A stretch of 64,000 nt of DNA, taken from positions 1,364,001 to 1,428,000 of the forward strand of contig CATNEN010000041.1 of assembly GCA_950097015.1 (NCBI GenBank). Reading direction: 5' to 3'. The DNA comes from Macrostomum hystrix. Taxonomy: Eukaryota > Animalia > Platyhelminthes. Shown in pieces: positions 17,771 to 41,331 of this stretch. Position 1 is the stretch's first letter. Each line of letters begins with the position of its first letter. Both the position numbers and the translations under genes were made by a program. The notes beneath the pieces are model-generated. The model saw only the letters and a list, made by a program, of their open reading frames with translations. It was not told the origin of the DNA and made no database searches.

Positions 17771-20700
17771 TCAGAAGCGTGTCCGGCGGACATGTCCGTG
17801 ATGCTGCTGCTGCCGGTGCGGCCTGGGCGGGCCGGAGCTGCGCCAGACGGCCTGCTTGAAGTTCGGAAGGGCGCCAGACCTGCTGCTGCTTCTCGACGAC
17901 TCTGAGTCGTCGTCTTCAGCGTCCCCGAACTCGTCGCTCCTGGCGATGGCCGGCGATCTGGTGAGAAATTCGGGCACCTCCTGGTTGCAGGCGCGCAAAA
18001 CCTGCTGAAGGTCCCGACGAATGTCCTTGGAGGCCAGATCCCTGTTCGTCAGGAAGGTCACGGCGCGGCCGGGTCGGCCTAGACGGCCAGTGCGGCCCAC
18101 CCGGTGAATGTACTGGTCAATGTACTGCGGAGCGTCAAAATTCACCACCAGGCTGACGCCAGGCAGGTCTAGGCCACGCGCGGCGACGTCGGTGGCCACC
18201 AGGACGCGGCTCCGACCGCTTTTGAAGCTCTCCAAGGACATCTGGCGGGTCTGGAATGGGGGGAAACTTATCTAGTTCGAACTTTAATTTAACACTGCGA
18301 ATCATGATCGTCCCTGTGGTCTGAAGCTCTCCGAGTCTAAGACAGCGGCGATCATGTTCACCAGCAAAAACAAATGGCATATTCGCCCCCTCCAGCTGTA
18401 TGGAAAGGACATCACCTTCCAGAAGCAAACTAAATGCTTGGGCATAACGCTCGATCACAGGCTCAGCTGGACTCCTCATGTCCACGCTAAAGCCAAAAAG
18501 GCCTTTGCGATCCTGGCGCAGCTGCGCAGGGCGGTAGGCAACACTTGGGGTCTCACCCCCAAACGCCTTTGGTGGATCTACACTGCTATGGTCAGACCGG
18601 CTGTTTCGTACGCCGGACTGATCTGGGCTAGCGCCCTGCAGCTAAAGACCTGCCATGAGACTCTTTGGAGAGTGCAAGGTCGCGCATGTCGCATGATCAT
18701 GAGCGCCCCGTTATCCGCCCCCTTCGATGGCCTCAGCGCCTTCCTGAACATCTTCCCGCTTGATATCTTTATCCGCGGTGAGGCGGCAAAAACCGCCCGG
18801 CGTCTCCTTGATGCCGGTGTGCGCTTCGTCCCCCAACGAGCGGCAGCGAAACGAAAGCTCCTGCCGCACACGGACCTTTGCCTGAGAGATTTGGGCGCGA
18901 GCAATGGAATCAATGTCCTCACGGACGGTGAACCGTGCACGCTCAACCTCTTTCAGCGCTTCAAAGTTCTCATCCCCACCAGGGACCAAGCTAGCGACCA
19001 CTGGAACACTCAGGAGGTCCACTGCTACACGGACGGATCCATGAAGGATGGCTCCGCTGGCTTCGGGGTCTGTATCCTAATCAACGGACGTGTTGTCGCC
19101 ACACACGCCCAACACACTGGAAACTCCTCGAGCGTTTTCCAGAACGAGGTCCTGGCCATCAGCTCCTGCGCTGCGGAGTTGAATGAGAAAAACATCTCAG
19201 GCAGGACTATCATCTTTCACTCGGACAGTCAGGCTACTCTGCAAGCCCTCTGTCACACCACCACAACCTCCCGGACAGTCTCCGACTGTGTCCGGCAGCT
19301 CAATAACCTGGCCGGTAAGAATACCGTCAGACTTCAGTGGATACCAGGGCATGCCGGTTTCCCTGGAAACGAGCTTGCTGACTACCTGGCCAAGCAGGGA
19401 GGCGCCAGCTCTGCGCCGGGCCCCTCCCCCCGGCTCCGATTCCGAACACCGTCATCTATCGTCAGATCAATGACTGGACCGCCAACCTCCATCTTACCCG
19501 GTGGAGAAGCACCACTAACTGCCGCCAATCCAAAGCGGCAGTTTCAGTGCCATCCACTCGGCGCCGGAAGGTCCTTCTAAACCAGATCCGGGCCCTCACC
19601 ATGACCCTCACGGGCCATGGCTGCTACGCCAGACACTTTCCTCCGTGGAGACCTCCGGAGTGAGCTGTGCCCGTTCTGCAACCTTGAGACGAGGATGCCC
19701 TGCACTTCGTCTGTCACTGCCCTTTCTTCACCAGAGAGAGGCTTAATTACCTCGGACCAAACCCATCCATGGACGATGTTTGCAGATCCGAGAACATCCC
19801 GCGGCTCGTCCGGTTCCTAAGGGCTACCAGACGAGCCTCTTTCTTCCCCAGCGAGGAACAAGCTGCAGGAAGGACCGAACACGGACCTCCCTGACTGGCC
19901 CCGCGCGATCGGCCGACTGCGGGTCTTTCAGGGATTAGCGGAATGGGCGACTCCCGCCTCCCCGTTGTGTCCATCGGACCGCCCTGCAGATAAGTCAAGT
20001 AAGTCAAGTCATGATCGTCCCAAGCTAAAATTAGCTCGTATTTTTCGAATTATTGCGACCTGTAAAATCGCTGATAAATTGCTTATCTGAAAAGCCAAAG
20101 ATCTGCCAGGGGAGACCCAGCTGCTCACCATCTGCCGCATGTCGCCGTGGAGGGCGACGGCGGCAACTCCGCCGGTCTCCAGCCGCCTGAGCAGCTGGCT
20201 GGCGCCCAACTTGGTCTGCACGAACACCAGGCAGCGCTCGTCATCACCCAACTCGGCTAGCAGGCGGCGCAGCGAGTCGAGCCGTGTGGCTTCGCCGGCG
20301 CCATCCAGGAGCAGCAGCTGCTGGCGGATGCCGGCCGGCACCGGGCCGGACTCGGCGCCGTGGCCGGCCAGGACTGAGATGCGCGCGTCCGGGCGGAGCA
20401 GATTGCGCACAATGCGAGCCACGTCTGGCGGGAATGTGGCTGAGAACAGCGAGGTCTGGCGGCCGGATGCGGGCGGCGGGCCAAACTCCTGGCTGGTGAT
20501 GATTCGGCGAATGTCTCGCTCGAAGCCCATGTCTAAGCAGCGGTCGGCCTCATCCAGTATGAGCTGGCGGCAGGCGCTCAGCGACAGGATGCCGCGCTGC
20601 AGAAAGTCCAACAGGCGGCCGGGTGTCGCAACGGCGATGTGGGCGCCCTCGTTCAGGATCTGCGGGGTCGGAGGCGGAGCTCAGACAGCTGGACTGGTCT

Positions 20701-24971: not shown

Positions 24972-26812
24972 TTTGTATAATGTATAACTTCAATGTATAA
25001 CTTAATGTTAATCCCCGAGTAGTATGCTCCCCGAAAAAAATTCATAATTCATATTCGAAATATAACAAACATTTCGGCTCTGTACAACCAAATCGCTTCA
25101 AAATTTACAGCTTTCTAACAGCAAGCGAGTTATCAATGCACATCAAATTTAGAGTCGATAGTCATACAGTTCAAAAGTTATATATGCCTGAACTGGGCTC
25201 GCCCATCTTCGCAATGCATTAATTATATATGTATTATTGGATGCTCACATTTATATTCAGAATGGAGCCACTTTCACTGCATGAAATCTAAAAAACTTTA
25301 CATCTAGAAAGTTATGCTGCTTTAATTTCTGTAATTTCAAAACTGATTCTGGTATCACAATTCTGGAATCTTATTTTGGCGATTGGGATAGATATAGACA
25401 TAAGAGATAATCGACTAGAGAAATTCACAAGAACTACAATTAGGAAGAGCAATTTATGTAGCTGGCTGGAGCGCAGAATACTCATGAACGAAATTTCCTG
25501 CATAAAAATCTGAAGTTGGTCAGTGCACATTTGGGAAACGCATGACATCAAAGATGACAGACGACTCGGAGGCAAAGACCGTGGGGCCGAGCTTGGCCGG
25601 CTGCAAAGGGATTAGCCAGAGAGCCAGAGGGAGAGAATTCGGACGAGTCTACCATGCTGAGGCGTGCGATGAGAGGGTGCAGCTCGCAGCTCGCTAGAAG
25701 TGTCATCAGACGCAGGCTGGTGACCTCGGATTGCTGTGTGGGTTCATAGCCTGGTAGTGCTGGTAGTTGTTCCAGCTCTCAGGTCTCACCAGGTCTCACC
25801 GTGGTCTCAGCTCCAGTGGTTAGCTCCAGCTCCAGCTAGGACAGCCCGGATCTAGACTTATTCCTAGACCTATTGATCCAATTGTCCCATTCGCGATAAG
25901 ACGCCAGCAATCCAACCTGGGGGTGCTACTAATCCATGGTCTGTGCAAGGATACTTCTAGACTATTGGCTAACGAAGGCTACTTCTAGGCTAACGAAGTG
26001 CTACGAGTGCAGGTCCTTGAGTCCGTATAGTCTCGGGTCACCATGTCGAGCTGATATGTGCATTTATCGAGTAGGAGGATAAAATGTATACTTTAATCCA
26101 GTAAACAACGACGCACCATTTGACAGGAACAAATTTGTTTTGAAAAGCTGAGAGAATTGCGAAAATATTTGCGCACAGGAAACGATGCTTCGTCCTTTTT
26201 AGTTAACTTAAGTTGAAGTATTACTTAACAAGTGCATTGTTGCACGTCTTAATACGCAGCAGAGCTAAGGACTAAGCTAGGGTAGATCAATAGAGGGTAG
26301 CAGGTGGCTTTTGCTTTTTTAGCGCGGGCTCAACCAGCAGCTGAGAGAAGCTCTGAGCGGAGAGCTGGCCACAATAGCAGCGCAGACTCGAAACTAGAGA
26401 ATGCAGAGGTGCGGCGCCAACCGCTGGCTCCAAGGTTTAGGCGGAGGCTTCAAGACCCTAAATTTGCCCATGAGAGCTGAGCTCACTGCTGGAGTGAGGA
26501 GTCAGCTCACTGCATGCGGTGTCAGCACAGTTGCGCTCAATTGTCTCCCGGGTCGGCCGAATCGATGCTCGATTGCTCGCTGAACCAGAACAGTCCGGTC
26601 GCGTTGTTGGCTCCAGCAGTTGGGGCGGCTGGCTACAGCTGAAAATGCTTTAATGCCGACTGCTTCACCCAGCTGGGCTACTCAACGGGTGTCGGAGAAA
26701 TTGTCTGAGAGACAGTATAGCAATTTATTTCTCGGCGTGTAAACAAACGGCGAATCCAATTCTTCTTTTGCTAAGCTGAGCCGGAACTCGAAGGCCAGAA
26801 TCGGCATCCAGG

Positions 26813-29800
26813 ATGCAGCTGGCAATGACTGGACTGCTTCTGCTCAGCCTGCTGGCGCTGTGCCACGGCGGCAGCTTAATACAGGGACTGCGACCCGAGT
26901 TCTGTGAGTTCACAATGTACTTTTGACAACCGGGTTTTTTGCTGTCCATACATCTCCTTGGCAAGGCAGCACCACGGCTGATTTAGGAGGCCATTGGGGG
27001 TTGGGCACTGATTTCACTGGTCTATTTTCTGGCATTGCTTAGTTTCTGAGCAAAATCTGTTAGTCAGGAGCTTCTGAATCTCATAATGCCTAATGTTTTC
27101 ACATGTTTTCAGCTAAAAAACTACCGATAAGCTACGGCTGCTTTAAGGACCACAGCGGCGCTCGCGACCTGACTGTGCTGGCCAAGAAGGGCTTCGTGAC
27201 CGCCCACGGCTGCATGTACCTCTGCAGAGGCATGGAGTACAAACTGTTCGGCCTGCAGAACGGCAGCGAGTGCTGGTGCGGCAACTCGCACGGCCGGCAT
27301 GGCAGGGCCAAACTCGCCAACTGCAACCTCAGCTGCACCGGCGACCGCAGGCAGAACTGCGGCGGCAAGCTGCACAACCGAATCTACCCCACCAGTGAGT
27401 ACTGACTGACTGACTGACTGACTGACTGACTGACTGACTGACTGACTGACTGACTGACTGACTGACTGACTGACTGACTGACTGACTGACTGACTGATGA
27501 GTGGATGAGTGGATGAGTCCTTGCTGAGCTCATAATGAAAATGATTTCCGCAATGGCCTTTCAGAGCATGCGAGGGCCAGGAAGGGTGAGTTTATGCAGC
27601 TCTCTATCTATCTATTTGCAGGGGGGCCCGGGGCACTTGTCGCACAAGCGACGGAGCGGCACGCCCCCAGACCGGCGAACTAGGCGCTTAGCGCCCATCG
27701 CGCCGCCTCCCCTGAGCAGGCACCACACACAGCAGCACAGACCAGCCGGGAGGGCAGGGAGGGCAGGAGGCACCCAGAATAGGCAGCAGCGCACCCACCC
27801 CAGCCCCACACGCGCAGAGCACCGAAATTAATCGGGACTTGAAGGGAGAATCGAACTAGCGTCCATTGGAGTAAGAGGCAGCGACGCTAGCCGCTGACCC
27901 ACTCGCCCCTTGTTTATGCAGCTCAGTCGTGGCCTAAAAGCTGCACACCGGTCCCATTTATTGAAAAGCAATGATAGCAACAACCACCTAATATTGCAGC
28001 GATCCTAATTGCCGATAGATCACCTTCACTTTCTTCTAAATCGAAAGGCTCAGGTGAGTCCATTGCCAGGTGCTCAAGCTGCGAGATGTCCTCAAAGTTC
28101 TAATCAAAGTTGAGCACTCACCCGCCAAAACCGCACAAACTACTCTTGCAGGTAGCCGACAGAAACTAAAACTGAAAATCAAAGTGAAGGGAAGGAACAA
28201 AAGAAGACCGGTGGTTGTGAAGAAGATAAAAGTACAGAACAATCAGCAGCGAACTGCGAAACTGAGCAAGTCGGGGCAAAGGCATGGACTGCAACTAGGT
28301 TTGCGATTCCACGGCGGCCTGCAAGTTCAGAGGCCAGTATGGAAGGTAAAGAAGGTGAAAAAACGCAGCCAGAAGTTAAAGCTGAAAATAAAAAACAGAA
28401 GGAAGCCAAAGTTTCACCAGCTGCTGGCAGGTGGCAGACATTTCAGAAGCCAAGTTTTTGCAACAAAAAAGAAAAAACTGTCCGTAAAGCTCCTCGACCG
28501 AAACGGCAGCAAGTCAAGAGGAAAGAAGGGCGGCAAGTGGAGAGGAAAGAAAAACGGCAAGTGGAGATTCAAGAAGGGCGGCAAGTGGAGAGGAAAGAAG
28601 GGCGGAAAGATCCGCGTCAAGATCGGCGGCAAGTGGAGATTCAAGAAGGGCGGCAAGTGGAGAGGAAAGAAAAACGGCAAGTGGAGATTCAAGAAGGGCG
28701 GCAAGTGGAGAGGAAAGAAAAACGGCAAGTGGAGATTCAAGAAGGGCGGCAAGTGGAGAGGAAAGAAGGGCGGCAAGTGGAGATTCAAGAAGGGCGGCAA
28801 GTGGAGAGGAAAGAAAAACGGCAAGTGGAGATTCAAGAACAGCGGCAAGTGGAGAGGAAAGAAGGGCGGCAAGTGGAGATTCAAGAAGGGCGGCAAGTGG
28901 AGAGGAAAGAAGGGCGGCAAGTGGAGAGGAAAGAAGGGAAGAAAGATCCGCGTCAAGATCGGCGGCAAGGGGAGATTCAAGAAGGGGGGCAAGTGGAGAG
29001 GAAAGAAGGGCGGCAAGTGGAGAGGAAAGAAAAACGGCAAGTGGAGATTCAAGAAGGGCGGCAAGTGGAGAGGAAAGAAGGACGGAAAGATCCGCGTCAA
29101 GATCGGCGGCAAGGGGAGATTCAAGAAGGGCGGCAAGTGGAGAGGAAAGAAGGGCGGCAAGTGGAGAGGAAAGAAAAACGGCAAGTGGAGATTCAAGAAG
29201 GGCGGCAAGTGGAGATTCAAGAAGGGCGGCAGGTGGAGAGGAAAGAAGGGAAGAAAGATCCGCGTCAAGATCGGCGGCAAGGGGAGATTCAAGAAGGGCG
29301 GCAAGTGGAGAGGAAAGAAGGGCGGCAAGTGGAGAGGAAAGAAAAACGGCAAGTGGAGATTCAAGAAGGGCGGCAAGTGGAGATTCAAGAAGGGCGGCAG
29401 GTGGAGAGGAAAGAAGGGAAGAAAGATCCGCGTCAAGATCGGCGGCAAGTGGAGATTCAAGAAGGGCGGCAGGTGGAGAGGAAAGAAGGGAAGAAAGATC
29501 CGCGTCAAGATCGGCGGCAAGTGGAGATTCAAGAAGGGCGGAAAGTGGAGACTCAAGAAAGGCGGCAAGTGGAGAGGAAAGAAGGGAAGAAAGATCCGCG
29601 TCAAGATCGGCGGCAAGTGGAGATTCAAGAAGAGCGGCAAGTGGAGATTCATGAAGGGCGGCAAGTGGAGAGGAAGGAAGGGAAGAAAGATCCGCGTCAA
29701 GATCGGCGGCAAGTGGAGATTCAAGAAGGGCGGCAAGTGGAGAGCCAGGAATGGTGACAAGAAGCGCAGAAGCGGAAGTCGAAGTGGAAGGAAGCTGCAC

Positions 29801-32800
29801 AACAGAATGGCCTTTGGTGTCACCATGAAGGCTCGCGGCCGAGGTCTACGAATCAAGTGGAAGGCATTAAAGAGCAAAAGGCAAAGCCGCGGAACGAAAA
29901 GTAGCAAAAAACTAGCAAAGCATTTTGGTGCCCTGCTGGGCGGCCGTCAAAAGGGCGGAATCATCTTTGCGAAACAGAAGCGCAAGTTCTTAATTAAGTC
30001 TGGTTCAAGGATTAGGCTCGGTGCAAAGTTGAGCAAAAGGAGGAGGGGACGCGGGAGAAGGAGAGGACGCGGGAGGAGGAGAGGACGCGGGAGAAGGAGA
30101 GGACGCGGGAGGAGGAGAGGACGCGGGAGAAGGAGAGGACGCGGGAAGAGGAGAGGAGGCGGGAGGAGGAGAGGACGCGGGAGGAGGAGAGGACGCGGGA
30201 GGAGGAGAGGACGCGGGAGAAGGAGAGGACGCGGGAGGAGGAGAGGACGCGGAAGAAGAGAAAGAAAGCTCAAGGGCATTGTCTCTGGTGTTACCGTTAA
30301 AAGAGGATTAAGAGTCAAGCGAATAAAATGGAAGGTTATTAAGTCCAAACGAAGAGTTAAAAGAAAAGAAACTATCAAAAGGCAATATCTAGCTCTCCTT
30401 GGCGGCACCGGTAAAGGCGGAATAATTTTTGCGAAGAAAAGGCCAAAGCTTACCGTCAACGCTAACCACAGAAAAAGCGCTCGAAAGCATGTCAAACTTG
30501 GTGGAAAGAGGACAGGAAGGAAGGGAAGAAAGATCCGCGTAAAGATCGGCGGCAAGTGGAGATTCAAGAAGGGCGGCAAGTGGAGAGGAAAGAAGGGCGG
30601 CAAGTGGAGAGGAAAGAAGGGAAGAAAGATCCGTGTCAAGATCGGCGGCAAGTGGAGATTCAAGAAGGGCGGCAAGTGGAGAGGAAGGAAGGGAAGAAAG
30701 ATCCGCGTCAAGATCGGCGGCAAGTGGAGATTCAAGAAGGGCGGCAAGTGGAGAGGAAAGAAGGGAAGAAAGATCCGCGTCAAGATCGGTGGCAAGTGGA
30801 GATTCAAGAAGGGCGGCAAGTGGAGAGGAAAGAAGGGCGGCAAGTGGAGAGGAAAGAAGGGCGGCAAGTGGAGAGGAAGGAAGGGAAGAAAGATCCGCGT
30901 CAAGATCGGCGGCAAGTGGAGAGGAAGGAAGGGAAGAAAGATCCGCGTCAAGATCGGCGGCAAGTGGAGATTCAAGAAGAGCGGCAGGTGGAGAGGAAAG
31001 AAGGGAAGAAAGATCCGCGTCAAGATCGGTGGCAAGTGGAGATTCAAGAAGGGCGGCAAGTGGAGAGGAAAGAAGGGCGGCAAGTGGAGAGGAAAGAAGG
31101 GCGGCAAGTGGAGAGGAAGGAAGGGAAGAAAGATCCGCGTCAAGATCGGCGGCAAGTGGAGAGGAAGGAAGGGAAGAAAGATCCGCGTCAAGATCGGCGG
31201 CAAGTGGAGATTCAAGAAGAGCGGCAAGTGGAGAGGAAAGAAGGGAAGAAAGATCCGCGTCAAGATCGGCGGCAAGTGGAGATTCAAGAAGGGCGGCAAG
31301 AGGAGAGGAAAGAAAGGAGGCAAGTGGAGAGGAAAGAAGGGAGGCAAGTGGAGAGGAAAGAAAGGAGGCAAGTGGAGAGGAAAGAAGGGAGGCAAGTGGA
31401 GAGGAAGGAAGGGAAGAAAGATCCGCGTCAAGATCGGCGGCAAGTGGAGATTCAAAAAGAGCGGCAAGTGGAGAGGAAAGAAGGGAAGAAAGATCGGCGT
31501 CAAGATCGGCGGCAAGTGGAGATTCAAGAAGGGCGGCAAGTGGAGATTCAAGAAGGGCGGCAAGTGGAGAGGAAGGAAGGGAAGAAAGATCGGCGTCAAG
31601 ATCGGCGGCAAGTGGAGATTCAAGAAGGGCGGCAAGTGGAGATTCAAGAAGGGCGGCAAGTGGAGAGGAAGGAAGGGAAGAAAGATCGGCGTCAAGATCG
31701 GCGGCAAGTGGAGATTCAAGAAGGGCGGCAAGTGGAGATTCAAGAAGGGCGGCAAGTGGAGATTCAAGAAGGGCGGCAAGTGGAGAGGAAGGAAGGGAAG
31801 AAAGATCGGCGTCAAGATCGGCGGCAAGTGGAGATTCAAGAAGGGCGGCAAGTGGAGAGGAAAGAAGGGCGGCAAGTGGAGAGGAAGGAAGGGAAGAAAG
31901 ATCCGCGTCAAGATCGGCGGCAAGTGGAGATTCAAGAAGGGCGGCAAGAGGAGAGGAAAGAAAGGAGGCAAGTGGAGAGGAAAGAAGGGAAGAAAGATCC
32001 GCGTCAAGATCGGCGGCAAGTGGAGATTCAAAAAGAGCGGCAAGTGGAGAGGAAAGAAGGGAAGAAAGATCGGCGTCAAGATCGGCGGCAAGTGGAGATT
32101 CAAGAAGGGCGGCAAGTGGAGATTCAAGAAGGGCGGCAAGTGGAGAGGAAGGAAGGGAAGAAAGATCCGCGTCAAGATCGGTGGCAAGTGGAGATTCAAG
32201 AAGGGCGGCAAGTGGAGAGGAAGGAAGGGAAGAAAGATCCGCGGCAAGATCGGCGGCAAGTGGAGAGGAAAGAAGGGCGGCAAGTGGAGAGGAAAGAAGG
32301 GCGGCAAGTGGAGAGGAAAGAAAAACGGCAAGTGGAGATTCAAGAAGGGCGGCAAGTGGAGTGGAAAGAAAAACGGCAAGTGGAGATTCAGGAAGGGCCG
32401 CAAGTGGAGAGGAAGGAATGGAAGAAAGATCGACATTAAGATCGGCGGCAAGTGGAGATTCAAGAAGGGCGGCAAGTGGAGAGGAAAGAAGGGAAGAAAG
32501 ATCCGCGTCAAGATCGGCGGCAAGCGGAGAGGAAAGAAGGGCGGCAAGTGGAGAGGAAAGAAAAACGGCAAGTGGAGATTCAAGAAGGGCGGCAAGTGGA
32601 GAGGAAGGAAGGGAAGAAATATCCGCGTCAAGATCGGCGGCAAGTGGAGAGGAAAGAAGGGCGGCAAGTGGAGAGGAAAGAAAAACGGCAAGTGGAGATT
32701 CAAGAAGGGCGGCAGGTGGAGAGGAAGGAAGGGAAGAAAGATCGACATTAAGATCGGCGGCAAGTGGAGATTCAAGAAGGGCGGCAAGTGGAGAGGAAGG

Positions 32801-35800
32801 AAGGGAAGAAAGATCCGCGTCAAGATCGGCGGCAAGTGGAGATTCAAGAAGGGCGGCAAGTGGAGAGGAAAGAAAAACGGCAAGTGGAGATTCAAGAAGG
32901 GCGGCAAGTGGAGAGGAAAGAAGGGCGGAAAGATCCGCGTCAAGATCGGCGGCAAGTGGAGATTCAAGAAGGGCGGCAAGTGGAGAGGAAAGAAAAACGG
33001 CAAGTGGAGATTCAAGAAGGGCGGCAAGTGGAGAGGAAAGAAGAACGGCAAGTGGAGATTCAAGAAGGGCGGCAAGTGGAGAGGAAGGAAGGGAAGAAAG
33101 ATCCGCGTCAAGATCGGTGGCAAGTGGAGAGGAAGGAAGGGAAGAAATATCCGCGTCAAGATCGGCGGCAAGTGGAGAGGAAAGAAGGGCGGCAAGTGGA
33201 GAGGAAGGAAGGGAAGAAATATCCGCGTCAAGATCGGCGGCAAGTGGAGAGGAAAGAAGGGCGGCAAGTGGAGAGGAAGGAAGGGCGGCAAGTGGAGAGG
33301 AAGGAAGGGAAGAAATATCCGCGTCAAGATCGGCGGCAAGTGGAGAGGAAAGAAGGGCGGCAAGTGGAGAGGAAGGAAGGGCGGCAAGTGGAGAGGAAGG
33401 AAGGGAAGAAATATCCGCGTCAAGATCGGCGGCAAGTGGAGAGGAAAGAAGGGCGGCAAGTGGAGAGGAAGGAAGGGCGGCAAGTGGAGAGGAAGGAAGG
33501 GAAGAAATATCCGCGTCAAGATCGGCGGCAAGTGGAGAGGAAAGAAGGGCGGCAAGTGGAGAGGAAGGAAGGGCGGCAAGTGGAGAGGAAGGAAGGGAAG
33601 AAAGATCCGCGTCAAGATCGGTGGCAAGTGGAGAGGAAGGAAGGGAAGAAATATCCGCGTCAAGATCGGCGGCAAGTGGAGAGGAAAGAAGGGCGGCAAG
33701 TGGAGAGGAAGGAAGGGAAGAAATATCCGCGTCAAGATCGGCGGCAAGTGGAGAGGAAAGAAGAACGGCAAGTGGAGATTCAAGAAGGGCGGCAAGTGGA
33801 GAGGAAGGAAGGGAAGAAAGATCCGCGTCAAGATCGGTGGCAAGTGGAGAGGAAGGAAGGGAAGAAATATCCGCGTCAAGATCGGCGGCAAGTGGAGAGG
33901 AAAGAAGGGCGGCAAGTGGAGAGGAAGGAAGGGAAGAAATATCCGCGTCAAGATCGGCGGCAAGTGGAGAGGAAAGAAGGGCGGCAAGTGGAGAGGAAGG
34001 AAGGGCGGCAAGTGGAGAGGAAGGAAGGGAAGAAATATCCGCGTCAAGATCGGCGGCAAGTGGAGAGGAAAGAAGGGCGGCAAGTGGAGAGGAAGGAAGG
34101 GCGGCAAGTGGAGAGGAAGGAAGGGAAGAAATATCCGCGTCAAGATCGGCGGCAAGTGGAGAGGAAAGAAGGGCGGCAAGTGGAGAGGAAGGAAGGGTGG
34201 CAAGTGGAGAGGAAGGAAGGGAAGAAATATCCGCGTCAAGATCGGCGGCAAGTGGAGAGGAAAGAAGGGCGGCAAGTGGAGAGGAAGGAAGGGCGGCAAG
34301 TGGAGAGGAAGGAAGGGAAGAAATATCCGCGTCAAGATCGGCGGCAAGTGGAGAGGAAAGAAGGGCGGCAAGTGGAGAGGAAGGAAGGGCGGCAAGTGGA
34401 GAGGAAGGAAGGGAAGAAATATCCGCGTCAAGATCGGCGGCAAGTGGAGAGGAAAGAAGGGCGGCAAGTGGAGAGGAAAGAAAAACGGCAAGTGGAGATT
34501 CAAGAAGGGCGGCAAGTGGAGAGGAAAGAAGGGCGGAAAGATCCGCGTCAAGATCGGCGGCAAGTGGAGATTCAAGAAGGGCGGCAAGTGGAGAGGAAAG
34601 AAGGGAAGAAAGATCCGCGTCAAGATCGGCGGCAAGTGGAGATTCAAGAAGAGCGGCAAGTGGAGAGGAAAGAAGAACGGCAAGTGGAGATTCAAGAAGG
34701 GCGGCAAGTGGAGAGGAAGGAAGGGAAGAAAGATCCGCGTCAAGATCGGCGGCAAGTGGAGAGGAAAGAAGGGTGGCAAGTGGAGAGGAAAGAAGGGAAG
34801 AAAGATCCGCGTCAAGATCGGCGGCAAGTGGAGATTCAAGAAGGGCGGCAAGTGGAGAGGAAAGAAAAACGGCAAGTGGAGATTCAAGAAGGGCGGCAAG
34901 TGGAGAGAAAAGAGGAGCGGTGTCGGTCGTGGATCGGTGAGACTGGAGTCTAAAGTAGTCAGAAAATACGCCTCGCTGTTGGGTGGAGCGGCTAAGGGCG
35001 GCATTGTGTTTGCCAAGCGAAAGCCAAAGTTTGTTGTGAAGTCAAAGAGCTCTGGTGGTGGTGCATCTGTGAGGTCAGGCAAAGTTAAAGTTTCCGCTGT
35101 AAACAACAGATCCGGTTCAGCTACTTCTTCTTCTGCAGTTGCAGGTGAGTCCGAATTGTCTATGAGTCTCTATGCCGTTCAATTGCTTCAAGGTTTACCC
35201 CAAGCATCGCTGTTGGATCCACTTTCAGTCGGCGACTCATCTTCGTCGTCCATTTCATCCGGTTCGAGTTCTCGTGAGTTGCATTTAACTTAAATAACTT
35301 TATTTCAAGAAGTTAACTTTATTATAGAAAGTTGTGGTTCAATAACTTCTAGACACTTCCTCATCAATTGACGCTGGCGGACGGACAGGTAAAACTGTTC
35401 ACCATAACTTTCTATGCTGTAATAGCTGACTAATGAGCGTTGACGAAGATTATTCAGCACTTTCGATTGCCGCCTATTTCAGAGGTCAAGACCATCACAA
35501 GCGTGGAGACGAAGACTTTTGAGTGTGAGTAACGCTTTTTCCGGTCTCACCCGCAATCTGAGCTGATCCTCTGAGCCGCTTCTGGCCCCATTCCTTTGTT
35601 TTGGACCAATCTTGTCCTTGGTTCCTTATGACTGGACCCTAGAAAGATTAGCTTACACCCACCCCGAATCCGCTTCACATTATTGGCTCCAACGTATTCA
35701 GCGTCCACCCACCTCACCGCTGCATTGTCCGTTCAGCGGAGGCCGCTGGTCTCGGCTGTTTCAAGGACTCGGCAACTGCCCGCGACCTTCCATTTAGCGC

Positions 35801-36029
35801 CAGCTTCAGCGGCCCGATGACCGTTGAGAAGTGCATGCAGGCCTGCGCAGACAAGAAGCACCGCTATTTCGGACTGCAGGCTGGCAGCCAGTGCTGGTGC
35901 GGCGACTCGTATGGCAAGCACGGCGGGCCAGTGGATGACGCCCAGTGCAACCAGAAGTGCAGCGGCAACAGCAGCCAGGTCTGCGGTGGCACCCTATTCA
36001 ATAGCATCTTCGACTCTGGCAAGCGCTGA
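26813..36029 (+). CDS. Secreted signal peptide-WSC-giant Lys/Arg/Gly/Trp octapeptide-repeat-WSC protein (gene B, ~2,584 aa)
   Basis: Exons 26813-26903 (MQLAMTGLLLLSLLALCHGGSLIQGLRPEF), 27113-27394 (WSC), 28000-28053, 28152-35144 (6,993-nt open exon), 35483-35524 and 35737-36029 (WSC, stop). All junctions are phase 1 with GTGAGT donors and YAG acceptors. The exons sum to 7,755 nt (2,585 codons). AATAAA lies at 36124-36129. Confidence 0.88.
27113..27394 (+). CDS. N-terminal WSC domain exon of gene B
   Basis: YGCFKD...CMYLC...FGLQNGSECWCGNSHG...CNLSCTG...CGGKLHNRIY. Confidence 0.92.
27401..27496. repeat. (ACTG)n microsatellite, ~24 copies
   Basis: Starts immediately after the GTGAGT donor of the WSC exon. 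Confidence 0.97.
28525..34910 (+). repeat. Coding 24-bp (octapeptide) repeat arrays GGKWRGKK / GGKWRFKK / GRKIRVKI, plus an 18-bp RRRGRG block at ~30040-30260
   Basis: Two arrays (~28525-29745 and ~30505-34910) lie inside the giant exon. Only this frame is open across the unique linkers. Confidence 0.95.
35737..36029 (+). CDS. C-terminal WSC domain exon of gene B
   Basis: GLGCFKDSATARDL...MTVEKCMQAC...YFGLQAGSQCWCG...CNQKCSG...CGGTLFNSIF. Confidence 0.92.
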
Positions 36030-36448
36030 CGGATTTGACCGAGCGCATGTAACCTGTTGACTTACGATATTGACACTTTAAAGGCATGGTGCAGGGTTCT
36101 GCTTACTAAAATTGGACTTACGAAATAAATAATATGAAAAGCTCATGCGAATGCTAGAGTACAAGAGTACATCCTAGCAAGCAGCCTGCTTTGTCATATC
36201 CTACTTTGAACTGGCTTTAAATTAGAAATAACTCTCTAGGCTTGCATTCGCATGCTGCGTTGCGGGGGTTGATTGTCTATGGCCGAGCCCGAGCGGCCTG
36301 ATGCAGCTACCGCTGCTGGCTGAGCGGACCGTGCTTAAGCAGATTATTTTAACCAAGCAAGAATCAGTGCCAGGCAGCGGAAAGCAACCAGGCCCGTGTC
36401 AAAAAGACCAAATCCGCCGCGTGTAGCTCGCAGTCGACAAGCTCCGCC

Positions 36449-36907
36449 ATGTGTCGCCAAGTCGCTCTGAGCTGGCGGCCCACCCGCTGTGGCGAGATCC
36501 CCGACCGCGCCATCATCCTGGGCTCCAGCGTGCACATTGGCCGGGCGAAGCATGAGAACGAGGTGATACCGGGCACCGGCATTCACGGCCAGCTGTATGT
36601 GCCGTACTGCGGCGAGGAGCACTGCCACGAGGACTACGAGGTGCTTTGCGACACCGCACTCCAGTGCTTCGGCCAGGGCTACGAGTGGTGCCCCATCGAT
36701 GCCAAGTGCGAGCAGGTCTGCATCCCGCCCACTGCCGTCATCGGCGGCCACACGGCCTGCAAGCAGCCGATTTACATAGCCAGAGCCTGCATCAACGGCG
36801 AATGGTGCGTGGGAAAGCTGAGCGAAGGCCAGTCCATCGCCTGCTTCCCCTACGGTGGCAAGGAGGTGCCCCTGGAGGAGTACGACCTCCTGATTTACTG
36901 CCCCTGA
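36449..36907 (+). CDS. DM9-repeat (DUF3421) protein, 152 aa, intronless, Cys-rich
   Basis: Two DM9-type repeats: W....GEIPDRAI...VHIGRAKHENEVIPG...LYVPYCGEE...YEVL and W....IPPTAVIGG...PIYIARA...GEWCVGK...FPYGGKEV...YDLL. Confidence 0.85.
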   Translation: MCRQVALSWRPTRCGEIPDRAIILGSSVHIGRAKHENEVIPGTGIHGQLYVPYCGEEHCHEDYEVLCDTALQCFGQGYEWCPIDAKCEQVCIPPTAVIGGHTACKQPIYIARACINGEWCVGKLSEGQSIACFPYGGKEVPLEEYDLLIYCP

Positions 36908-37902: not shown

Positions 37903-40730
37903 GATGGGACAGCAGCCTCCGATGGGAGATGGGACAGCAGCCTCCGATGGGAGATGGGACAGCAGCCTCCGATGGGAGATGGGACAGCAGCCTCAGATGG
38001 GAGATGGGACAGCAGCCTCCGATTGGAGATGGGACAGCAGCCTCCGATTGGAGATGGGACAGCAGCCTCAGATGGGAGATGGGACAGCAGCCTCAGATGG
38101 GAGATGGGACAGCAGCCTCCGATGGGAGATGGGACAGCAGCCTCAGATGGGAGATGGGACAGCAGCCTCCGATTGGAGATGGGACAGCAGCCTCCGATGG
38201 GAGATGGGACAGCAGCCTCAGATGGGAGATGGGACAGCAGCCTCAGATGGGAGATGGGACAGCAGCCTCAGATGGGAGATGGGACAGCAGCCTCCGATGG
38301 GAGATGGGACAGCAGCCTCAGATGGGAGATGGGACAGCAGCCTCAGATGGGAGATGGGACAGCAGCCTCAGATGGGAGATGGGACAGCAGCCTCCGATTG
38401 GAGATGGGACAGCAGCCTCAGATGGGAGATGGGACAGCAGCCTCAGATGGGAGATGGGACAGCAGCCTCAGATGGGAGATGGGACAGCAGCCTCAGATGG
38501 GAGATGGGACAGCAGCCTCCGATTGGAGATGGGACAGCAGCCTCAGATGGGAGATGGGACAGCAGCCTCAGATGGGAGATGGGACAGCAGCCTCAGATGG
38601 GAGATGGGACAGCAGCCTCAGATGGGAGATGGGACAGCAGCCTCAGATGGGAGATGGGACAGCAGCCTCAGATGGGAGATGGGACAGCAGCCTCCGATGG
38701 GAGATGGGACAGCAGCCTCAGATGGGAGATGGGACAGCAGCCTCAGATGGGAGATGGGACAGCAGCCTCAGATGGGAGATGGAACAGCAGCCTCAGATGG
38801 GGATGGGACAGCAGCCTCAGATGGGAGATGGGACAGCAGCCTCAGATGGGAGATGGGACAGCAGCCTCCGATGGGAGATGGGACAGCAGCCTCCGATGGG
38901 AGATGGGACAGCAGCCTCAGATAGGATATGGGACAGCAGCCTCAGATGGGAGATGGGACAGCAGCCTCAGATGGGAGATGGGACAGCAGCCTCAGATGGG
39001 AGATGGGACAGCAGCCTCAGATGGGAGATGGGACAGCAGCCTCAGATGGGAGATGGGACAGCAGCCTCAGATGGGAGATGGGACAGCAGCCTCAGATGGG
39101 AATGGGACAGCAGCCTCAGATGGGAGATGGGACAGCAGCCTCAGATGGGAGATGGGACAGCAGCCTCAGATGGGAGATGGGACAGCAGCCTCAGATGGGA
39201 GATGGGACAGCAGCCTCCGATGGGAGATGGGACAGCAGCCTCAGATGGGGATGGGACAGCAGCCTCAGATGGCAGATGGGACAGCAGCCTCAGATGGGAG
39301 ATGGAACAGCAGCCTAAATTGGCAGATGGGACAGCAGCCTCAGATTGGAGATGGGACAGCAGCCTCAGATGGGAGATGGGACAGCAGCCTCAGATGGGAG
39401 ATGGGACAGCAGCCTCCGATGGGAGATGGGACAGCAGCCTCAGATGGGGATGGGACAGCAGCCTCAATTGGCAGATGGAACAGCAGCCTCAGATGGGAGA
39501 TGGGACAGCAGCCTCAAATGGGAGATGGGACAGCAGCCTCAGATGGGAGATGGGACAGCAGCCTCCGATGGGAGATGGGACAGCAGCCTCAGATAGGATA
39601 TGGGACAGCAGCCTCAGATGGGAGATGGGACAGCAGCCTCAGATGGGAGATGGGACAGCAGCCTCAGATGGGAGATGGGACAGCAGCCTCAGATGGGAGA
39701 TGGGACAGCAGCCTCCGATGGGAGATGGGACAGCAGCCTCCGATGGGAGATGGGACAGCAGCCTCAGATTGGAGATGGGACAGCAGCCTCAGATGGGAGA
39801 TGGGACAGCAGCCTCAGATGGGAGATGGGACAGCAGCCTCCGATGGGAGATGGGACAGCAGCCTCAGATGGGGATGGGACAGCAGCCTCAATTGGCAGAT
39901 GGAACAGCAGCCTCAGATGGGAGATGGGACAGCAGCCTCAGATGGGAGATGGGACAGCAGCCTCAAATGGGAGATGGGACAGCAGCCTCAGATGGGAGAT
40001 GGGACAGCAGCCTCCGATGGGAGATGGGACAGCAGCCTCAGATTGGAGATGGGACAGCAGCCTCAGATGGGAGATGGGACAGCAGCCTCAGATGGGAGAT
40101 GGGACAGCAGCCTCCGATGGGAGATGGGACAGCAGCCTCAGATGGGAGATGGGACAGCAGCCTCCGATGGGAGATGGGACAGCAGCCTCAGATGGGGATG
40201 GGACAGCAGCCTCAATTGGCAGATGGAACAGCAGCCTCAGATGGGAGATGGGACAGCAGCCTCAAATGGGAGATGGGACAGCAGCCTCAGATGGGAGATG
40301 GGACAGCAGCCTCCGATGGGAGATGGGACAGCAGCCTCCGATGGGAGATGGGACAGCAGCCTCAGATTGGAGATGGGACAGCAGCCTCAGATGGGAGATG
40401 GGACAGCAGCCTCCGATGGGAGATGGGACAGCAGCCTCCGATGGGAGATGGGACAGCAGCCTCAGATGGGAGATGGGACAGCAGCCTCCGATGGGAGATG
40501 GGACAGCAGCCTCAGATGGGAGATGGGACAGCAGCCTCAGATGGGAGATGGGACAGCAGCCTCCGATGGGAGATGGGACAGCAGCCTCAGATTGGAGATG
40601 GGACAGCAGCCTCAGATGGGAGATGGGACAGCAGCCTCAGATGGGAGATGGGACAGCAGCCTCAGATGGGAGATGGGACAGCAGCCTCAAATGGGAGATG
40701 GGACAGCAGCCTCAGATGGGAGATGGGAGA
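37903..40730. repeat. 25-bp minisatellite (gatgggagatgggacagcagcctca), ~110 copies
   Basis: 2.8-kb array. All long GQQPQMGDGTAASDGRWDSSLRWEM ORFs are frame-rotation artefacts of the 25-bp period. Confidence 0.97.
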
Positions 40731-41331
40731 GCAAAATCAGTTGGGAGAATTCCGAGCTTCATGGCTACACGGAGCATCCCAATTTGTAGCGCATCTTGAT
40801 GGACTGCAGGAATTCCCGTTGCAGGTGTAGCTGTGCATAATGTTTAGCAGGCTCAGCATGTTCCTCAGGAAGTGTTTTGGTATACAGGATTCTTCAGGAA
40901 TATTCCCGGCTCCAACTACTTGAGCTGGGTCACTGCGCGGAAGACACGGAAACTAAACAAAAATGCGAGGTACAAGACCAGGTCAGAAGATGGACAAACT
41001 CGTCGATCGGCTGTTTAGCAGTTCATTTTTTGGAAAACGCTGAGCCAGCTCAGCGATTAGGACATGAGGCATGAAAATTTTATGCTGTCCATATTTGTCA
41101 AATTTTATGCCAATAATTCAACAAGCGGATGGGGAAGCATCCTGCTCAGGGATTTGCATTTCCCGGTCTGCTTTGGAATCCCATGGGACCGGCTGGGGAT
41201 CGAGGAGACTGAAGAAATCGAGGGAGGGTATTTTGTTGGAGAGTCATTTTGCTAAATTTATTCCCCGTTTTCCGCTGCTCTCCAGCTCCGTGACAAGTCG
41301 CAGACGCCGATGCAAGGCGCAGTGATGATCG

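What the first reader, a model, noticed from the sequence alone, without database searches (positions are those of the whole stretch)
26813..36029. Giant secreted polycation flanked by two WSC glycan-binding domains (candidate glue, gel or defence secretion)
Seen: a spliced ~2,584-aa model with a signal peptide, a WSC domain, ~2,300 aa whose repeat units are 50% K+R with Trp/Phe/Ile and essentially no acidic residues, and a second WSC domain. No TM or GPI segment is visible. Established: WSC domains bind carbohydrates, and K/R-rich secreted giants occur in flatworm adhesion (Macrostomum ap1, which uses C-type lectin/vWD/EGF domains rather than WSC). Inference: a dumbbell of two glycan anchors plus a polycation linker could cross-link anionic mucus, egg-coat or ejaculate polymers, or disrupt microbial membranes. 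I do not recognise this architecture as a described family.
Basis: partly seen in the sequence, partly recalled or inferred. Interest (0 to 1): 0.85.

Follow-up and report, generated by a model that had tools for sequence, protein, structure and literature searches.

The report
Giant secreted WSC-capped polycation gene
A Macrostomum-type flatworm transcribes a gene for a roughly 298 kDa secreted protein that is nearly half lysine and arginine and has a sugar-binding-type WSC domain at each end; it most likely glues or gels negatively charged material, and no described protein has this design.

Summary
The gene has seven exons, not six. All introns are phase 1 and every donor is GTGAGT. The product is 2,591 aa: signal peptide, WSC domain, a 6,993-nt exon, and a second WSC domain.

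- **RNA support:** spliced RNA contigs confirm exons 1-5. The two 3' junctions are only predicted.
- **The giant exon codes for protein:** 234 octapeptide units keep one frame. The four non-repeat stretches have no stop in that frame, where about 23 are expected.
- **Composition:** K+R is 43% overall and about 49% in the arrays. Trp is 7%. The giant exon has nine acidic residues. Net charge is about +1,090. There is no TM or GPI segment.
- **Relatives:** no homologue of the cationic part was found. The nearest WSC domains (41-45% identity) are Macrostomum lignano proteins.
- **Paralogue:** a gene on the minus strand of the same window has a signal peptide, a WSC domain and an (RRRRVIRRVI)n giant exon. 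Earlier scan notes list further secreted polycations elsewhere in this genome.

My best reading is a disordered polyanion cross-linker in a gland secretion, analogous to the GRK-rich flatworm adhesion protein Mlig-ap1 but not a member of that family. The tissue is unknown. WSC proteins are common among M. lignano prostate transcripts, so seminal fluid is a live option.

The parts
26813..26903 (+). Exon 1: start codon and signal peptide (MQLAMTGLLLLSLLALCHG...), 91 nt, ends in phase 1
   Evidence: RNA contigs join 26903 to 27113 with GT..AG in X5, X6 and X2. It is the only strongly hydrophobic segment of the protein. Contigs extend upstream to at least 26700 as 5' UTR.
27113..27394 (+). Exon 2: WSC domain 1 (8 Cys, two N-glycosylation sequons)
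   Evidence: Pfam PF01822, 61 bits, E 1.3e-16. Covered by spliced contigs. Cys and sequon positions.
27565..27585 (+). Exon 3: 21-nt micro-exon (KHARARK), phase 1-1
   Evidence: Contig pieces and the joint 27584/5 to 27999/28000 in X5, X6 and X1.
28000..28053 (+). Exon 4: 54-nt exon, phase 1-1
   Evidence: Joints 27585|28000 and 28053|28152, GT..AG, in X5, X6 and X1.
28152..35144 (+). Exon 5: 6,993-nt giant exon encoding 2,330 residues of polycation. Donor GTGAGT at 35145.
   Evidence: RNA contigs enter it at 28152 and run to 28546 before the assembly breaks in the repeat. Open frame. 0 stops against 22.8 expected in the non-repeat parts. Composition.
28286..28528 (+). Module copy 1 (divergent): ...WKVKKVKKR...QLLAGG...VFATKKKK
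   Evidence: Alignment A1 of the four module copies, 31-44% identity, invariant LLGG / FA / K columns.
28529..29752 (+). Array 1: 51 in-register octapeptide units (GGKWRGKK, NGKWRFKK, GRKIRVKI types)
29798..30037 (+). Module copy 2
   Evidence: Alignment A1.
30038..30252 (+). (RGRGRR)n array, 18-nt period, about 12 copies
   Evidence: TRF: 93% matches, 0 indels. Translation.
30254..30523 (+). Module copy 3
   Evidence: Alignment A1.
30524..34915 (+). Array 2: 183 in-register octapeptide units in variable higher-order blocks (B-f-g, B-g-g-g ...)
   Evidence: TRF: 24-nt period, 181.7 copies, 68% matches, 0% indels. Unit catalogue and codon analysis.
34916..35144 (+). Module copy 4 followed by a Ser/Gly-rich tail
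   Evidence: Alignment A1. Translation.
35483..35524 (+). Exon 6 (predicted): 42 nt, phase 1-1
   Evidence: Acceptor ctatttcag and donor GTGAGT, frame kept. No RNA joint evidence; only the k-mer share.
35737..36029 (+). Exon 7 (predicted junction): complete WSC domain 2 and the stop codon
   Evidence: Pfam PF01822, 82 bits, E 3.5e-23. The first in-frame ATG (35817) would cut off the first Cys, so the exon needs an upstream exon. Held by RNA runs.
36124..36129 (+). AATAAA polyadenylation signal, 95 nt after the stop codon
   Evidence: Read from the sequence.

Best explanation
**What it is (shown or strongly supported).** This is a real, expressed, seven-exon gene of a Macrostomum-type flatworm. 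It encodes a 2,591-aa (about 298 kDa) protein that enters the secretory pathway. The mature protein is a dumbbell. A WSC domain sits at each end. Between them lie about 2,330 residues of glycine-spaced lysine/arginine with regularly placed Trp, Phe, Ile and Val, and almost no acidic residues. Net charge is about +1,090.

**How it probably works (inferred).** The middle is an intrinsically disordered polycation whose aromatic and aliphatic residues act as 'stickers'. It would be packed in secretory granules with a polyanion. After release it would bind and condense negatively charged polymers or surfaces (sulfated or acidic glycans, glycocalyx, biofilm) through charge and cation-pi contacts, forming a cohesive gel or glue. 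The two WSC domains would tie the ends into a glycan network.

Functionally it would resemble the GRK-rich regions of the flatworm cohesion protein Mlig-ap1. The producing gland is not known. The candidates are adhesive, prostate (seminal fluid), cement/shell and rhabdite glands.
For: - **Splicing and expression:** GT..AG joints in RNA contigs of four runs join the signal-peptide exon, WSC1, two micro-exons and the giant exon in one frame. The 3' exons are held by RNA runs at the share I expected for exons alone.
- **Coding frame:** there are no stops in 1,170 nt of non-repeat sequence against 22.8 expected. 234 units keep register with 0% indels although nucleotide identity is only 68-78%. 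Neighbouring satellites in the window are 90-98% identical, and one has a 25-nt period.
- **Domains:** WSC scores are 61 and 82 bits against a cut-off of 27.8, with 8 Cys each.
- **Secretion:** the signal peptide is the only hydrophobic segment, and sequons lie in both WSC domains.
- **Disorder:** AlphaFold2 gives mean pLDDT 41.5 for module 3 plus 26 units and 54.6 for the module.
- **Selection on chemistry rather than sequence:** the paralogue at 5556 to 1 (minus strand) has the same layout of signal peptide, WSC and giant exon. Its repeat is unrelated: 54% Arg and 35% Ile+Val.
- **Analogy:** Mlig-ap1 combines more than 3,600 aa of K/R/G-rich regions with lectin-type domains. Heparin blocks attachment in that system (PMC6410801, PMC8621496).
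- **Chemistry:** the heptapeptide GKWRFKK also occurs in a designed antiviral peptide, PEP 19-8D, in the table of PMC4632391. From my own knowledge, that peptide series was designed to bind LPS and heparan sulfate. The match shows only that this chemistry is used to bind polyanions.
Against: - There are no data on tissue, on the protein itself or on binding.
- The two 3' splice junctions are not confirmed by RNA joints, so an isoform ending at the in-frame stop at 35293 without WSC2 is not excluded.
- Short-read contigs cannot show that the whole 7-kb exon is present in mature mRNA.
- Carbohydrate binding by animal WSC domains is not established.
- The arrays look recently homogenised (few synonymous variants within a unit type). 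Part of the length could therefore be neutral minisatellite expansion in a satellite-rich genome.
- A protein this cationic and amphipathic could equally act on membranes.
Confidence: 0.5

Rival explanations
1. It is a seminal-fluid (prostate-gland) protein. The polycation is transferred with the ejaculate, where it binds sperm or the partner's antrum glycocalyx, or gels the ejaculate. This rival concerns mainly the site of action and overlaps with the best explanation on mechanism.
For: In M. lignano many prostate-limited transcripts carry WSC domains (Table S1 of PMC5977470, read). RNA815_80.4, which has two WSC domains, is prostate-specific (PMC4490696). Mlig-pro46 and 'several other SFP candidates' resemble WSCD2 (PMC6953679). 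The nearest WSC domains to this gene are M. lignano WSC proteins. The repeats turn over fast between paralogues, as expected for reproductive proteins.
Against: The described prostate WSC transcripts are about 0.7-1.4 kb, not 8 kb, and none is reported as polycationic. RNA815_80.4 is a different sequence. WSC domains also occur in unrelated gene families of this genome, such as channels and WSC-PAN clusters (earlier notes). No expression data by tissue were available here.
Confidence: 0.2
2. It is a defence polycation. The intact polymer acts on microbial or predator membranes and on LPS-like polyanions as a tethered, multivalent cationic-amphipathic antimicrobial. The WSC ends would target microbial glucans.
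For: The GRKIRVKIGGKWRFKK blocks alternate basic and hydrophobic residues around a GG turn. Their hydrophobic moment peaks at 160-180 degrees, and AlphaFold2 draws weak hairpins there. Trp/Arg/Lys-rich chemistry is typical of membrane-active peptides, and a designed antiviral peptide shares GKWRFKK. Fungal WSC domains bind beta-glucan and xylan (my own knowledge).
Against: Most units (GGKWRG[KR]K, 101 of 234) have a single hydrophobic residue in eight and are poorly amphipathic. There are no disulfides or acidic pro-pieces. A 298 kDa polymer is unlike known effectors. Nothing was tested.
Confidence: 0.15
3. It is a polyprotein precursor, cut at dibasic sites into hundreds of small cationic peptides (for example GGKWRG or GRKIRVKIGGKWRF, possibly amidated) that act as antimicrobial or signalling peptides.
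For: Every unit ends in KK or RK (91 KK and 74 RK in array 2). A Gly before the dibasic pair could serve as an amide donor (my own knowledge of peptide processing).
Against: The classical convertase sites are almost absent from array 2: 4 KR, 3 RR and 1 RX[KR]R in 1,464 residues. P1-Lys sites are poor substrates. There are no acidic spacers, and the WSC domains at both ends have no role in such a precursor.
Confidence: 0.07
4. The gene is real, but the arrays are largely a neutral, runaway minisatellite expansion inside a coding exon. Function would lie in the WSC domains and the modules, and the repeat would be only a tolerated spacer.
For: The window is full of minisatellites. Unit types are nearly identical at the nucleotide level within a type, which indicates recent amplification. 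Purine-rich repeats leave several frames open.
Against: Frame and register are kept over 234 units. Three old, codon-diverged unit types are interleaved (AGA against CGC for Arg, GGC against GGA for Gly). The module-plus-array unit is itself duplicated four times. An independent paralogue, and according to earlier notes other loci, have converged on giant cationic arrays.
Confidence: 0.07
5. It is not a coding feature at all: a purine-rich satellite that happens to lie between two separate small WSC genes.
For: Long ORFs exist in other frames and on the opposite strand of the array.
Against: RNA contigs splice exon 4 into the array-bearing exon in frame. The non-repeat inserts are open only in that frame. 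WSC2 has no start codon or signal peptide of its own that would keep the domain intact.
Confidence: 0.01

Closest known systems
Mlig-ap1, the cohesion protein of the Macrostomum lignano duo-gland adhesive system (PMC6410801, PMC8621496)
   Same: It is a giant secreted flatworm protein. About two thirds of it is Gly/Arg/Lys-rich low complexity with an extreme pI, combined with a carbohydrate-binding-type domain. Polyanions (heparin) interfere with its function.
   Different: Mlig-ap1 has its folded domains (C-type lectin, vWD/C8/TIL, 17 EGF) in the middle and the GRK regions at both ends. Here the polycation is in the middle and the only folded domains are two WSC domains at the ends. The repeats are a strict Trp-containing octapeptide. 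No sequence relation was found.
Small WSC-domain proteins limited to the prostate gland of M. lignano (RNA815_80.4, Mlig-pro46 and others; PMC4490696, PMC5977470, PMC6953679)
   Same: They are secreted, have one or two WSC domains, and belong to the same genus-level WSC expansion. The nearest WSC hits (41-45% identity) are M. lignano proteins.
   Different: Their transcripts are about 0.7-1.4 kb and no polycationic array is reported. RNA815_80.4 has an unrelated, AT-rich sequence.
The paralogue in the same window (minus strand, ATG at 5556, runs off the left edge)
   Same: Signal peptide followed by SIQG, a phase-1 exon, one WSC exon (44-48% identical), then a giant exon with a K/R-rich lead-in and a cationic-hydrophobic array.
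   Different: Its repeat is a 32-aa Arg/Ile/Val unit (54% Arg) without Gly, Trp or Lys. It lacks the LLGG..KGGIIFAK modules. Its 3' end, and so any second WSC domain, lies outside the window.
Designed or natural cationic Trp/Arg/Lys peptides that bind polyanions (for example PEP 19-8D, PMC4632391)
   Same: Local chemistry, down to a shared GKWRFKK heptapeptide.
   Different: These are 20-30-residue free peptides. The flatworm protein is a polymer of 234 units with folded end domains. This is a resemblance only.

Membership tests
WSC domain (Pfam PF01822) | Match to the family HMM above the gathering score | tested here: met
   61 bits (exon 2) and 82 bits (exon 7) against a cut-off of 27.8. 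The paralogue scores 67 bits.
WSC domain (Pfam PF01822) | Eight conserved cysteines per domain | tested here: met
   Cys at model residues 40, 64, 68, 84, 86, 101, 105, 113 and at 2502, 2527, 2531, 2547, 2549, 2565, 2569, 2577.
WSC domain (Pfam PF01822) | Carbohydrate binding | not testable with these tools
   This needs glycan arrays or pull-downs with recombinant domains.
Mlig-ap1-type flatworm adhesion protein | Large Lys/Arg/Gly-rich low-complexity regions in a secreted giant | tested here: met
   K 28%, G 25% and R 18% over 2,330 aa, with a signal peptide.
Mlig-ap1-type flatworm adhesion protein | Core of C-type lectin, vWD/C8/TIL and EGF domains | tested here: not met
   Pfam finds only WSC in exons 1, 2 and 7. 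In the giant exon it found nothing in the pieces scanned: its first 150 aa, modules 2-3 with the RGR array, module 4 and the tail. The two octapeptide arrays were not scanned.
Mlig-ap1-type flatworm adhesion protein | Sequence homology to ap1 | tested here: inconclusive
   No hit at E <= 0.001 for the cationic part. Those searches see only proteins of 1,280-4,080 aa, and Mlig-ap1 may lie outside that range (I recall about 5,400 aa). I held no ap1 sequence for a direct comparison.
Mlig-ap1-type flatworm adhesion protein | Expression in adhesive gland cells and presence in footprints | not testable with these tools
   The sequencing runs are coded, and no tissue-resolved data were available.
Macrostomum prostate-limited WSC seminal-fluid candidates | Signal peptide plus WSC domain(s) | tested here: met
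Macrostomum prostate-limited WSC seminal-fluid candidates | Prostate-limited expression | not testable with these tools
   The literature gives this only for other, small transcripts.
Convertase-processed polyprotein precursor of cationic peptides | KR, RR or RX[KR]R sites between the units | tested here: not met
   Array 2 has 4 KR, 3 RR and 1 RX[KR]R, against 91 KK and 74 RK.
Convertase-processed polyprotein precursor of cationic peptides | Acidic spacer or pro-regions that neutralise the peptides | tested here: not met
   9 D/E in 2,330 residues.
   Single-sequence AlphaFold2 gives mean pLDDT 41.5 and pTM 0.37. Short strand pairs appear only at the GRKIRVKI-GGKWRF blocks.

The most novel reading that the evidence does not exclude
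This gene is one member of a set of unrelated-by-sequence giant secreted cationic-amphipathic polymers in Macrostomum. The set would include the WSC-capped GGKWRGKK and RRRRVIRRVI proteins, and, according to earlier notes, signal-peptide poly-Arg and (GGRPGGF)n proteins. Together they would form a so far undescribed class of exocrine 'polycation materials'. The octapeptide arrays would fold into beta-hairpins and set into a gel only when salt or a polyanion screens their charge. The animal would use this either as a switchable glue or as a transferred ejaculate matrix, with the WSC caps choosing the glycan target.
Probability: 0.25. Interest if true: 0.8.

Novelty: new variant of a known kind. 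Interest (0 to 1): 0.62.

Why it matters
Flatworm temporary adhesion is the only system where a giant secreted K/R/G-rich protein has been tied to a function, and the authors call the role of those regions 'enigmatic' (PMC8621496).

This gene offers a cleaner case. It is a single 7-kb exon of strict octapeptides, with a defined set of three unit types, bracketed by two small folded domains. A paralogue solves the same problem with a different repeat. That makes several questions testable with short recombinant fragments:
- whether charge density, the Trp/Phe stickers or the WSC caps set the behaviour of the material;
- whether the protein is a glue, an ejaculate matrix or a defence.

It also shows that short-read transcriptomes and current annotations miss such genes. 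No relative closer than 45% WSC identity appeared among 1.84 billion representatives. Catalogues of seminal-fluid and adhesive proteins for these animals are therefore probably incomplete.

Tried and rejected
- **Word-based homology searches.** I searched the giant exon (residues 534-790 and 1-533) against 5.8 billion clusters and found no hit. These searches see only proteins of 1,280-4,080 aa, and the HMMER bias filters penalise this composition, so the blank is weak.
- **ESM Atlas.** Searching the first 790 residues gave a best score of 0.67 (a 'Bindin fragment' cluster), far below the level that means anything.
- **phmmer of WSC1 against 1.84 billion representatives.** The list is dominated by multi-WSC proteins. 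There was no self or orthologue hit (maximum 45% identity) and no hit with a comparable cationic stretch.
- **AlphaFold2.** Both the array plus module (pLDDT 41.5) and the four-copy module alignment (pLDDT 54.6) gave no usable fold, so I ran no fold search.
- **Exact scan of metagenome contigs** for the predicted exon 5/6 junction: no match.
- **Check against RNA815_80.4.** I asked whether this gene is the published two-WSC prostate transcript. It is not; that transcript is 969 nt with a different sequence.
- **Repeat DNA and peptide in the literature.** The repeat DNA is absent from the supplement of PMC5977470. A full-text search for the octapeptide found only a chance heptapeptide match in a designed peptide.
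- **Rfam and tRNA scans of 26-37 kb:** nothing. My first guess that the intronic repeat is a tRNA-derived SINE is therefore unsupported.
- **Findings search by sequence:** blank.
Full report
**1. What is in the sequence**

The longest open frame of the region (28070-35293, plus strand) translates into an extraordinarily basic repeat protein.

Upstream there is a short ORF that starts at 26813 with a typical signal peptide, and an ORF with a WSC domain. Downstream there is a second WSC ORF that ends at 36029. Pfam confirms WSC (PF01822):
- 61 bits for exon 2;
- 65.9 bits for the ATG-started part of the last ORF;
- 82 bits for the complete last exon.

Reading the splice sites from the sequence gives a model of seven exons:

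| Exon | Coordinates |
|---|---|
| 1 | 26813-26903 |
| 2 | 27113-27394 |
| 3 | 27565-27585 |
| 4 | 28000-28053 |
| 5 | 28152-35144 |
| 6 | 35483-35524 |
| 7 | 35737-36029 |

Every intron is phase 1. Every donor is GTGAGT. Every acceptor is a pyrimidine tract ending in CAG. The joined CDS is 7,776 nt with a single terminal stop, giving 2,591 aa.

**2. RNA evidence**

I laid Logan contigs of four public runs on 26700-28500. They show the GT..AG joints 26903|27113, 27585|28000 and 28053|28152. Contiguous records bridge 27394|27565.

One 961-nt contig (X5, no mismatches) runs from the 5' UTR through exons 1-4 into exon 5. It stops 46 nt past 28500, where the repeat begins. The signal-peptide exon, WSC1 and the giant exon are therefore on one mRNA and in one frame.

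For the 3' end I had no second read-laying run. The stretch 35000-36200 is held by the same RNA runs at a word share of 0.44-0.47. I worked out by hand that exons alone would give about 0.43-0.47. This is consistent with the model but does not prove the two junctions.

Independent arguments link exon 7 to the same transcript:
- The WSC2 domain starts five residues after the acceptor at 35737.
- The first in-frame ATG (35817) would delete its first cysteine.
- No signal-peptide exon lies between 35293 and 35737.

An exact scan of metagenome contigs for the exon 5/6 junction found nothing.

**3. Is the 7-kb exon coding or a satellite?**

The window is rich in minisatellites, and several of them are open in more than one frame. 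ORF length alone therefore proves nothing. Other frames and the opposite strand of this array are also open for 1,400-1,700 codons. Four observations settle the question.

- **RNA.** RNA splices into the exon in the frame of the long ORF.
- **Stops in the non-repeat stretches.** The exon has four non-repeat stretches, 1,170 nt in all. They contain no stop in the model frame, against 22.8 expected. None of 2,000 shuffles reached zero. Each of the other five frames has stops in at least two of the four stretches.
- **Register.** The 234 octapeptide units stay in one register with 0% indels, although nucleotide identity is only 68-78%. The neighbouring non-coding satellites are 90-98% identical, and the one at 37903-40748 has a 25-nt period.
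- **Old unit types.** The array is built from three unit types that differ in synonymous codons (AGA against CGC for Arg, GGC against GGA for Gly). Entropy at third codon positions (6.17) exceeds that at first and second positions (4.06 each).

Within a unit type the copies are nearly identical. This points to recent homogenisation.

**4. Anatomy of the protein**

Composition and charge:
- K 26%, G 24%, R 17%, W 6.9%, I 5%.
- Net charge about +1,090, and calculated pI at the top of the scale (about 12).
- Nine acidic residues in the 2,330 aa of exon 5.

The only hydrophobic 19-mer is the signal peptide, and the C-terminus (…FNSIFDSGKR) is polar. No TM or GPI signal is seen. Each WSC domain has eight Cys and one or two N-glycosylation sequons.

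Exon 5 has a higher-order plan. A module of about 55 aa (consensus …RIKWKV.KSKR…ALLGG..KGGIIFAK.K.KF.VK…) occurs four times at 31-44% identity. The layout is:
- module 1, then array 1 (51 units);
- module 2, then an (RGRGRR)n array;
- module 3, then array 2 (183 units);
- module 4, then a Ser/Gly-rich tail.

The unit types are GGKWRG[KR]K (101 copies), [GN]GKWRFKK (54) and G[RG][KN]IRVKI (about 50). They occur in variable blocks such as B-f-g and B-g-g-g.

The B unit plus the next unit (GRKIRVKI-GG-KWRFKK) alternates basic and hydrophobic residues on either side of a GG pair. Its hydrophobic moment is highest at 160-180 degrees.

AlphaFold2 run on the single sequence gives mean pLDDT 41.5, with short strand pairs exactly at those blocks. 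The module alone gives 54.6 with no fold. I read the polymer as disordered on its own, with a latent hairpin tendency.

**5. Relatives**

Two searches of 5.8 billion clusters with the cationic part found nothing. The Atlas search was uninformative.

phmmer of WSC1 against 1.84 billion representatives found 5,383 WSC proteins, but none above 45% identity. The gene and its orthologues are therefore not in that collection.

Several of the most similar single- and few-domain hits I looked up are Macrostomum lignano 'WSC domain-containing' proteins. None of the 150 best hits has a window with more than 0.21 net positive charge per residue, against about 0.45 here.

A retroelement ORF in the window is 57% identical to an M. 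lignano protein. Together with earlier notes, this places the genome in or near Macrostomum. I could not name the species.

Inside the window there is a paralogue on the minus strand:
- ATG at 5556, and an 88-nt phase-1 exon encoding a signal peptide followed by the same SIQG motif.
- A WSC exon at 4677-5054, 44-48% identical to both WSC domains here.
- A giant exon from 3847 that runs off the window's left edge. It encodes 320 K/R-rich residues and then at least 960 residues of a 32-aa Arg/Ile/Val repeat (54% R, 35% I+V; 96-nt period, 0% indels).

The two genes share nothing in the repeats except the chemistry, which is extreme positive charge plus regularly spaced hydrophobic residues. Earlier notes of this scan list more secreted polycations elsewhere in the same genome. 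These include another WSC-fused one (s1-380427) and a spliced, transcribed signal-peptide poly-Arg gene (s1-286104). I did not check these notes.

**6. How it most likely works**

Shown: it is transcribed and spliced, and its sequence has every mark of a secretory protein.

Inferred: a disordered chain with roughly one positive charge every two residues, and a Trp, Phe or Ile/Val sticker in every unit, will bind any polyanion multivalently. It will condense with it by complex coacervation aided by cation-pi contacts. Two lectin-type domains at the ends can link such condensates to glycans.

The nearest experimental precedent is Mlig-ap1. Its GRK-rich regions make up two thirds of the protein, and heparin abolishes its cohesive function (PMC6410801; PMC8621496).

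That precedent supports 'works like'. It does not support membership, because the domain core that defines ap1 is absent here.

On location, the literature gives a different prior. WSC domains are conspicuous among prostate-limited seminal-fluid candidates of M. lignano (PMC5977470 Table S1, PMC4490696, PMC6953679). I therefore keep seminal fluid as the main alternative site.

A membrane-active defence role is chemically plausible but untested.

A convertase-cut polyprotein is unlikely. KR, RR and furin motifs are almost absent from the arrays, and there are no acidic spacers.

Internal splicing of the array is also unlikely, because it is purine-rich and lacks pyrimidine tracts for acceptors. 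This is read from the sequence.

**7. Novelty and verdict**

The functional interpretation is reasonable but unproven.

I found no paper or database entry with a WSC-polycation-WSC architecture, and none with the GGKWRGKK repeat. It is best filed as a new variant of a known kind: giant secreted K/R/G-rich flatworm gland proteins that carry glycan-binding-type domains.

The scan has flagged similar polycations on other DNA of this genome, so this is a family-level phenomenon rather than a single oddity.

Noticed in passing
window 1-5556, minus strand: This is a paralogous gene. It has its ATG at 5556, an 88-nt phase-1 signal-peptide exon (ends at 5469), a WSC exon within 4677-5054 (Pfam 67 bits), and a giant exon from about 3847 that runs off the window's left edge. 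The giant exon has a K/R-rich lead-in of about 320 aa and then at least 960 aa of a 32-aa Arg/Ile/Val repeat (54% Arg). Whether it also ends in a second WSC domain cannot be seen.
   Followed up: partly
window 36449-36907, plus strand: An ORF with a strong DM9 repeat domain (Pfam PF11901, 96 bits) starts about 420 nt after the stop codon of the polycation gene and beyond its AATAAA. It is probably a separate neighbouring gene, and I did not examine any link.
   Followed up: no
window 37903-40748: A 25-nt satellite with 114 copies at 95% identity. It gives roughly 960-aa ORFs in two frames that encode the same peptide. Because the period is not a multiple of three, it is non-coding. It served as an internal contrast to the giant exon.
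   Followed up: partly
window 27600-27910 (intron 3 of the gene): A dispersed repeat. Many unrelated RNA contigs with high depth (up to about 550) and loose ends map here in X5 and X6. Rfam and ARAGORN find no tRNA or known RNA, so its nature is open.
   Followed up: partly
window 27401-27497 (intron 2): A perfect (ACTG)24 microsatellite directly after the exon 2 donor. The read tool dropped rows there, which is why the 27394|27565 joint appears only as contig pieces.
   Followed up: no
window 18354-19580, plus strand: A retroelement ORF with an RNase H domain. It is 61% identical to a JGI metagenome protein. It is 57% identical to a UniProt M. lignano entry named 'WSC domain-containing protein' (A0A1I8H162), which is probably a chimeric gene model.
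   Followed up: partly
window 13933-15307, plus strand: A Cys-rich ORF with an EGF-like domain runs directly into a 21-nt minisatellite (14605-15307, 33 copies), which it reads as (ESLSIHS)n.
   Followed up: no
run X10: A sediment metatranscriptome holds 18% of the sampled words of the gene's 3' end. The animal, or a close relative, and this transcript are therefore detectable in environmental RNA.
   Followed up: no
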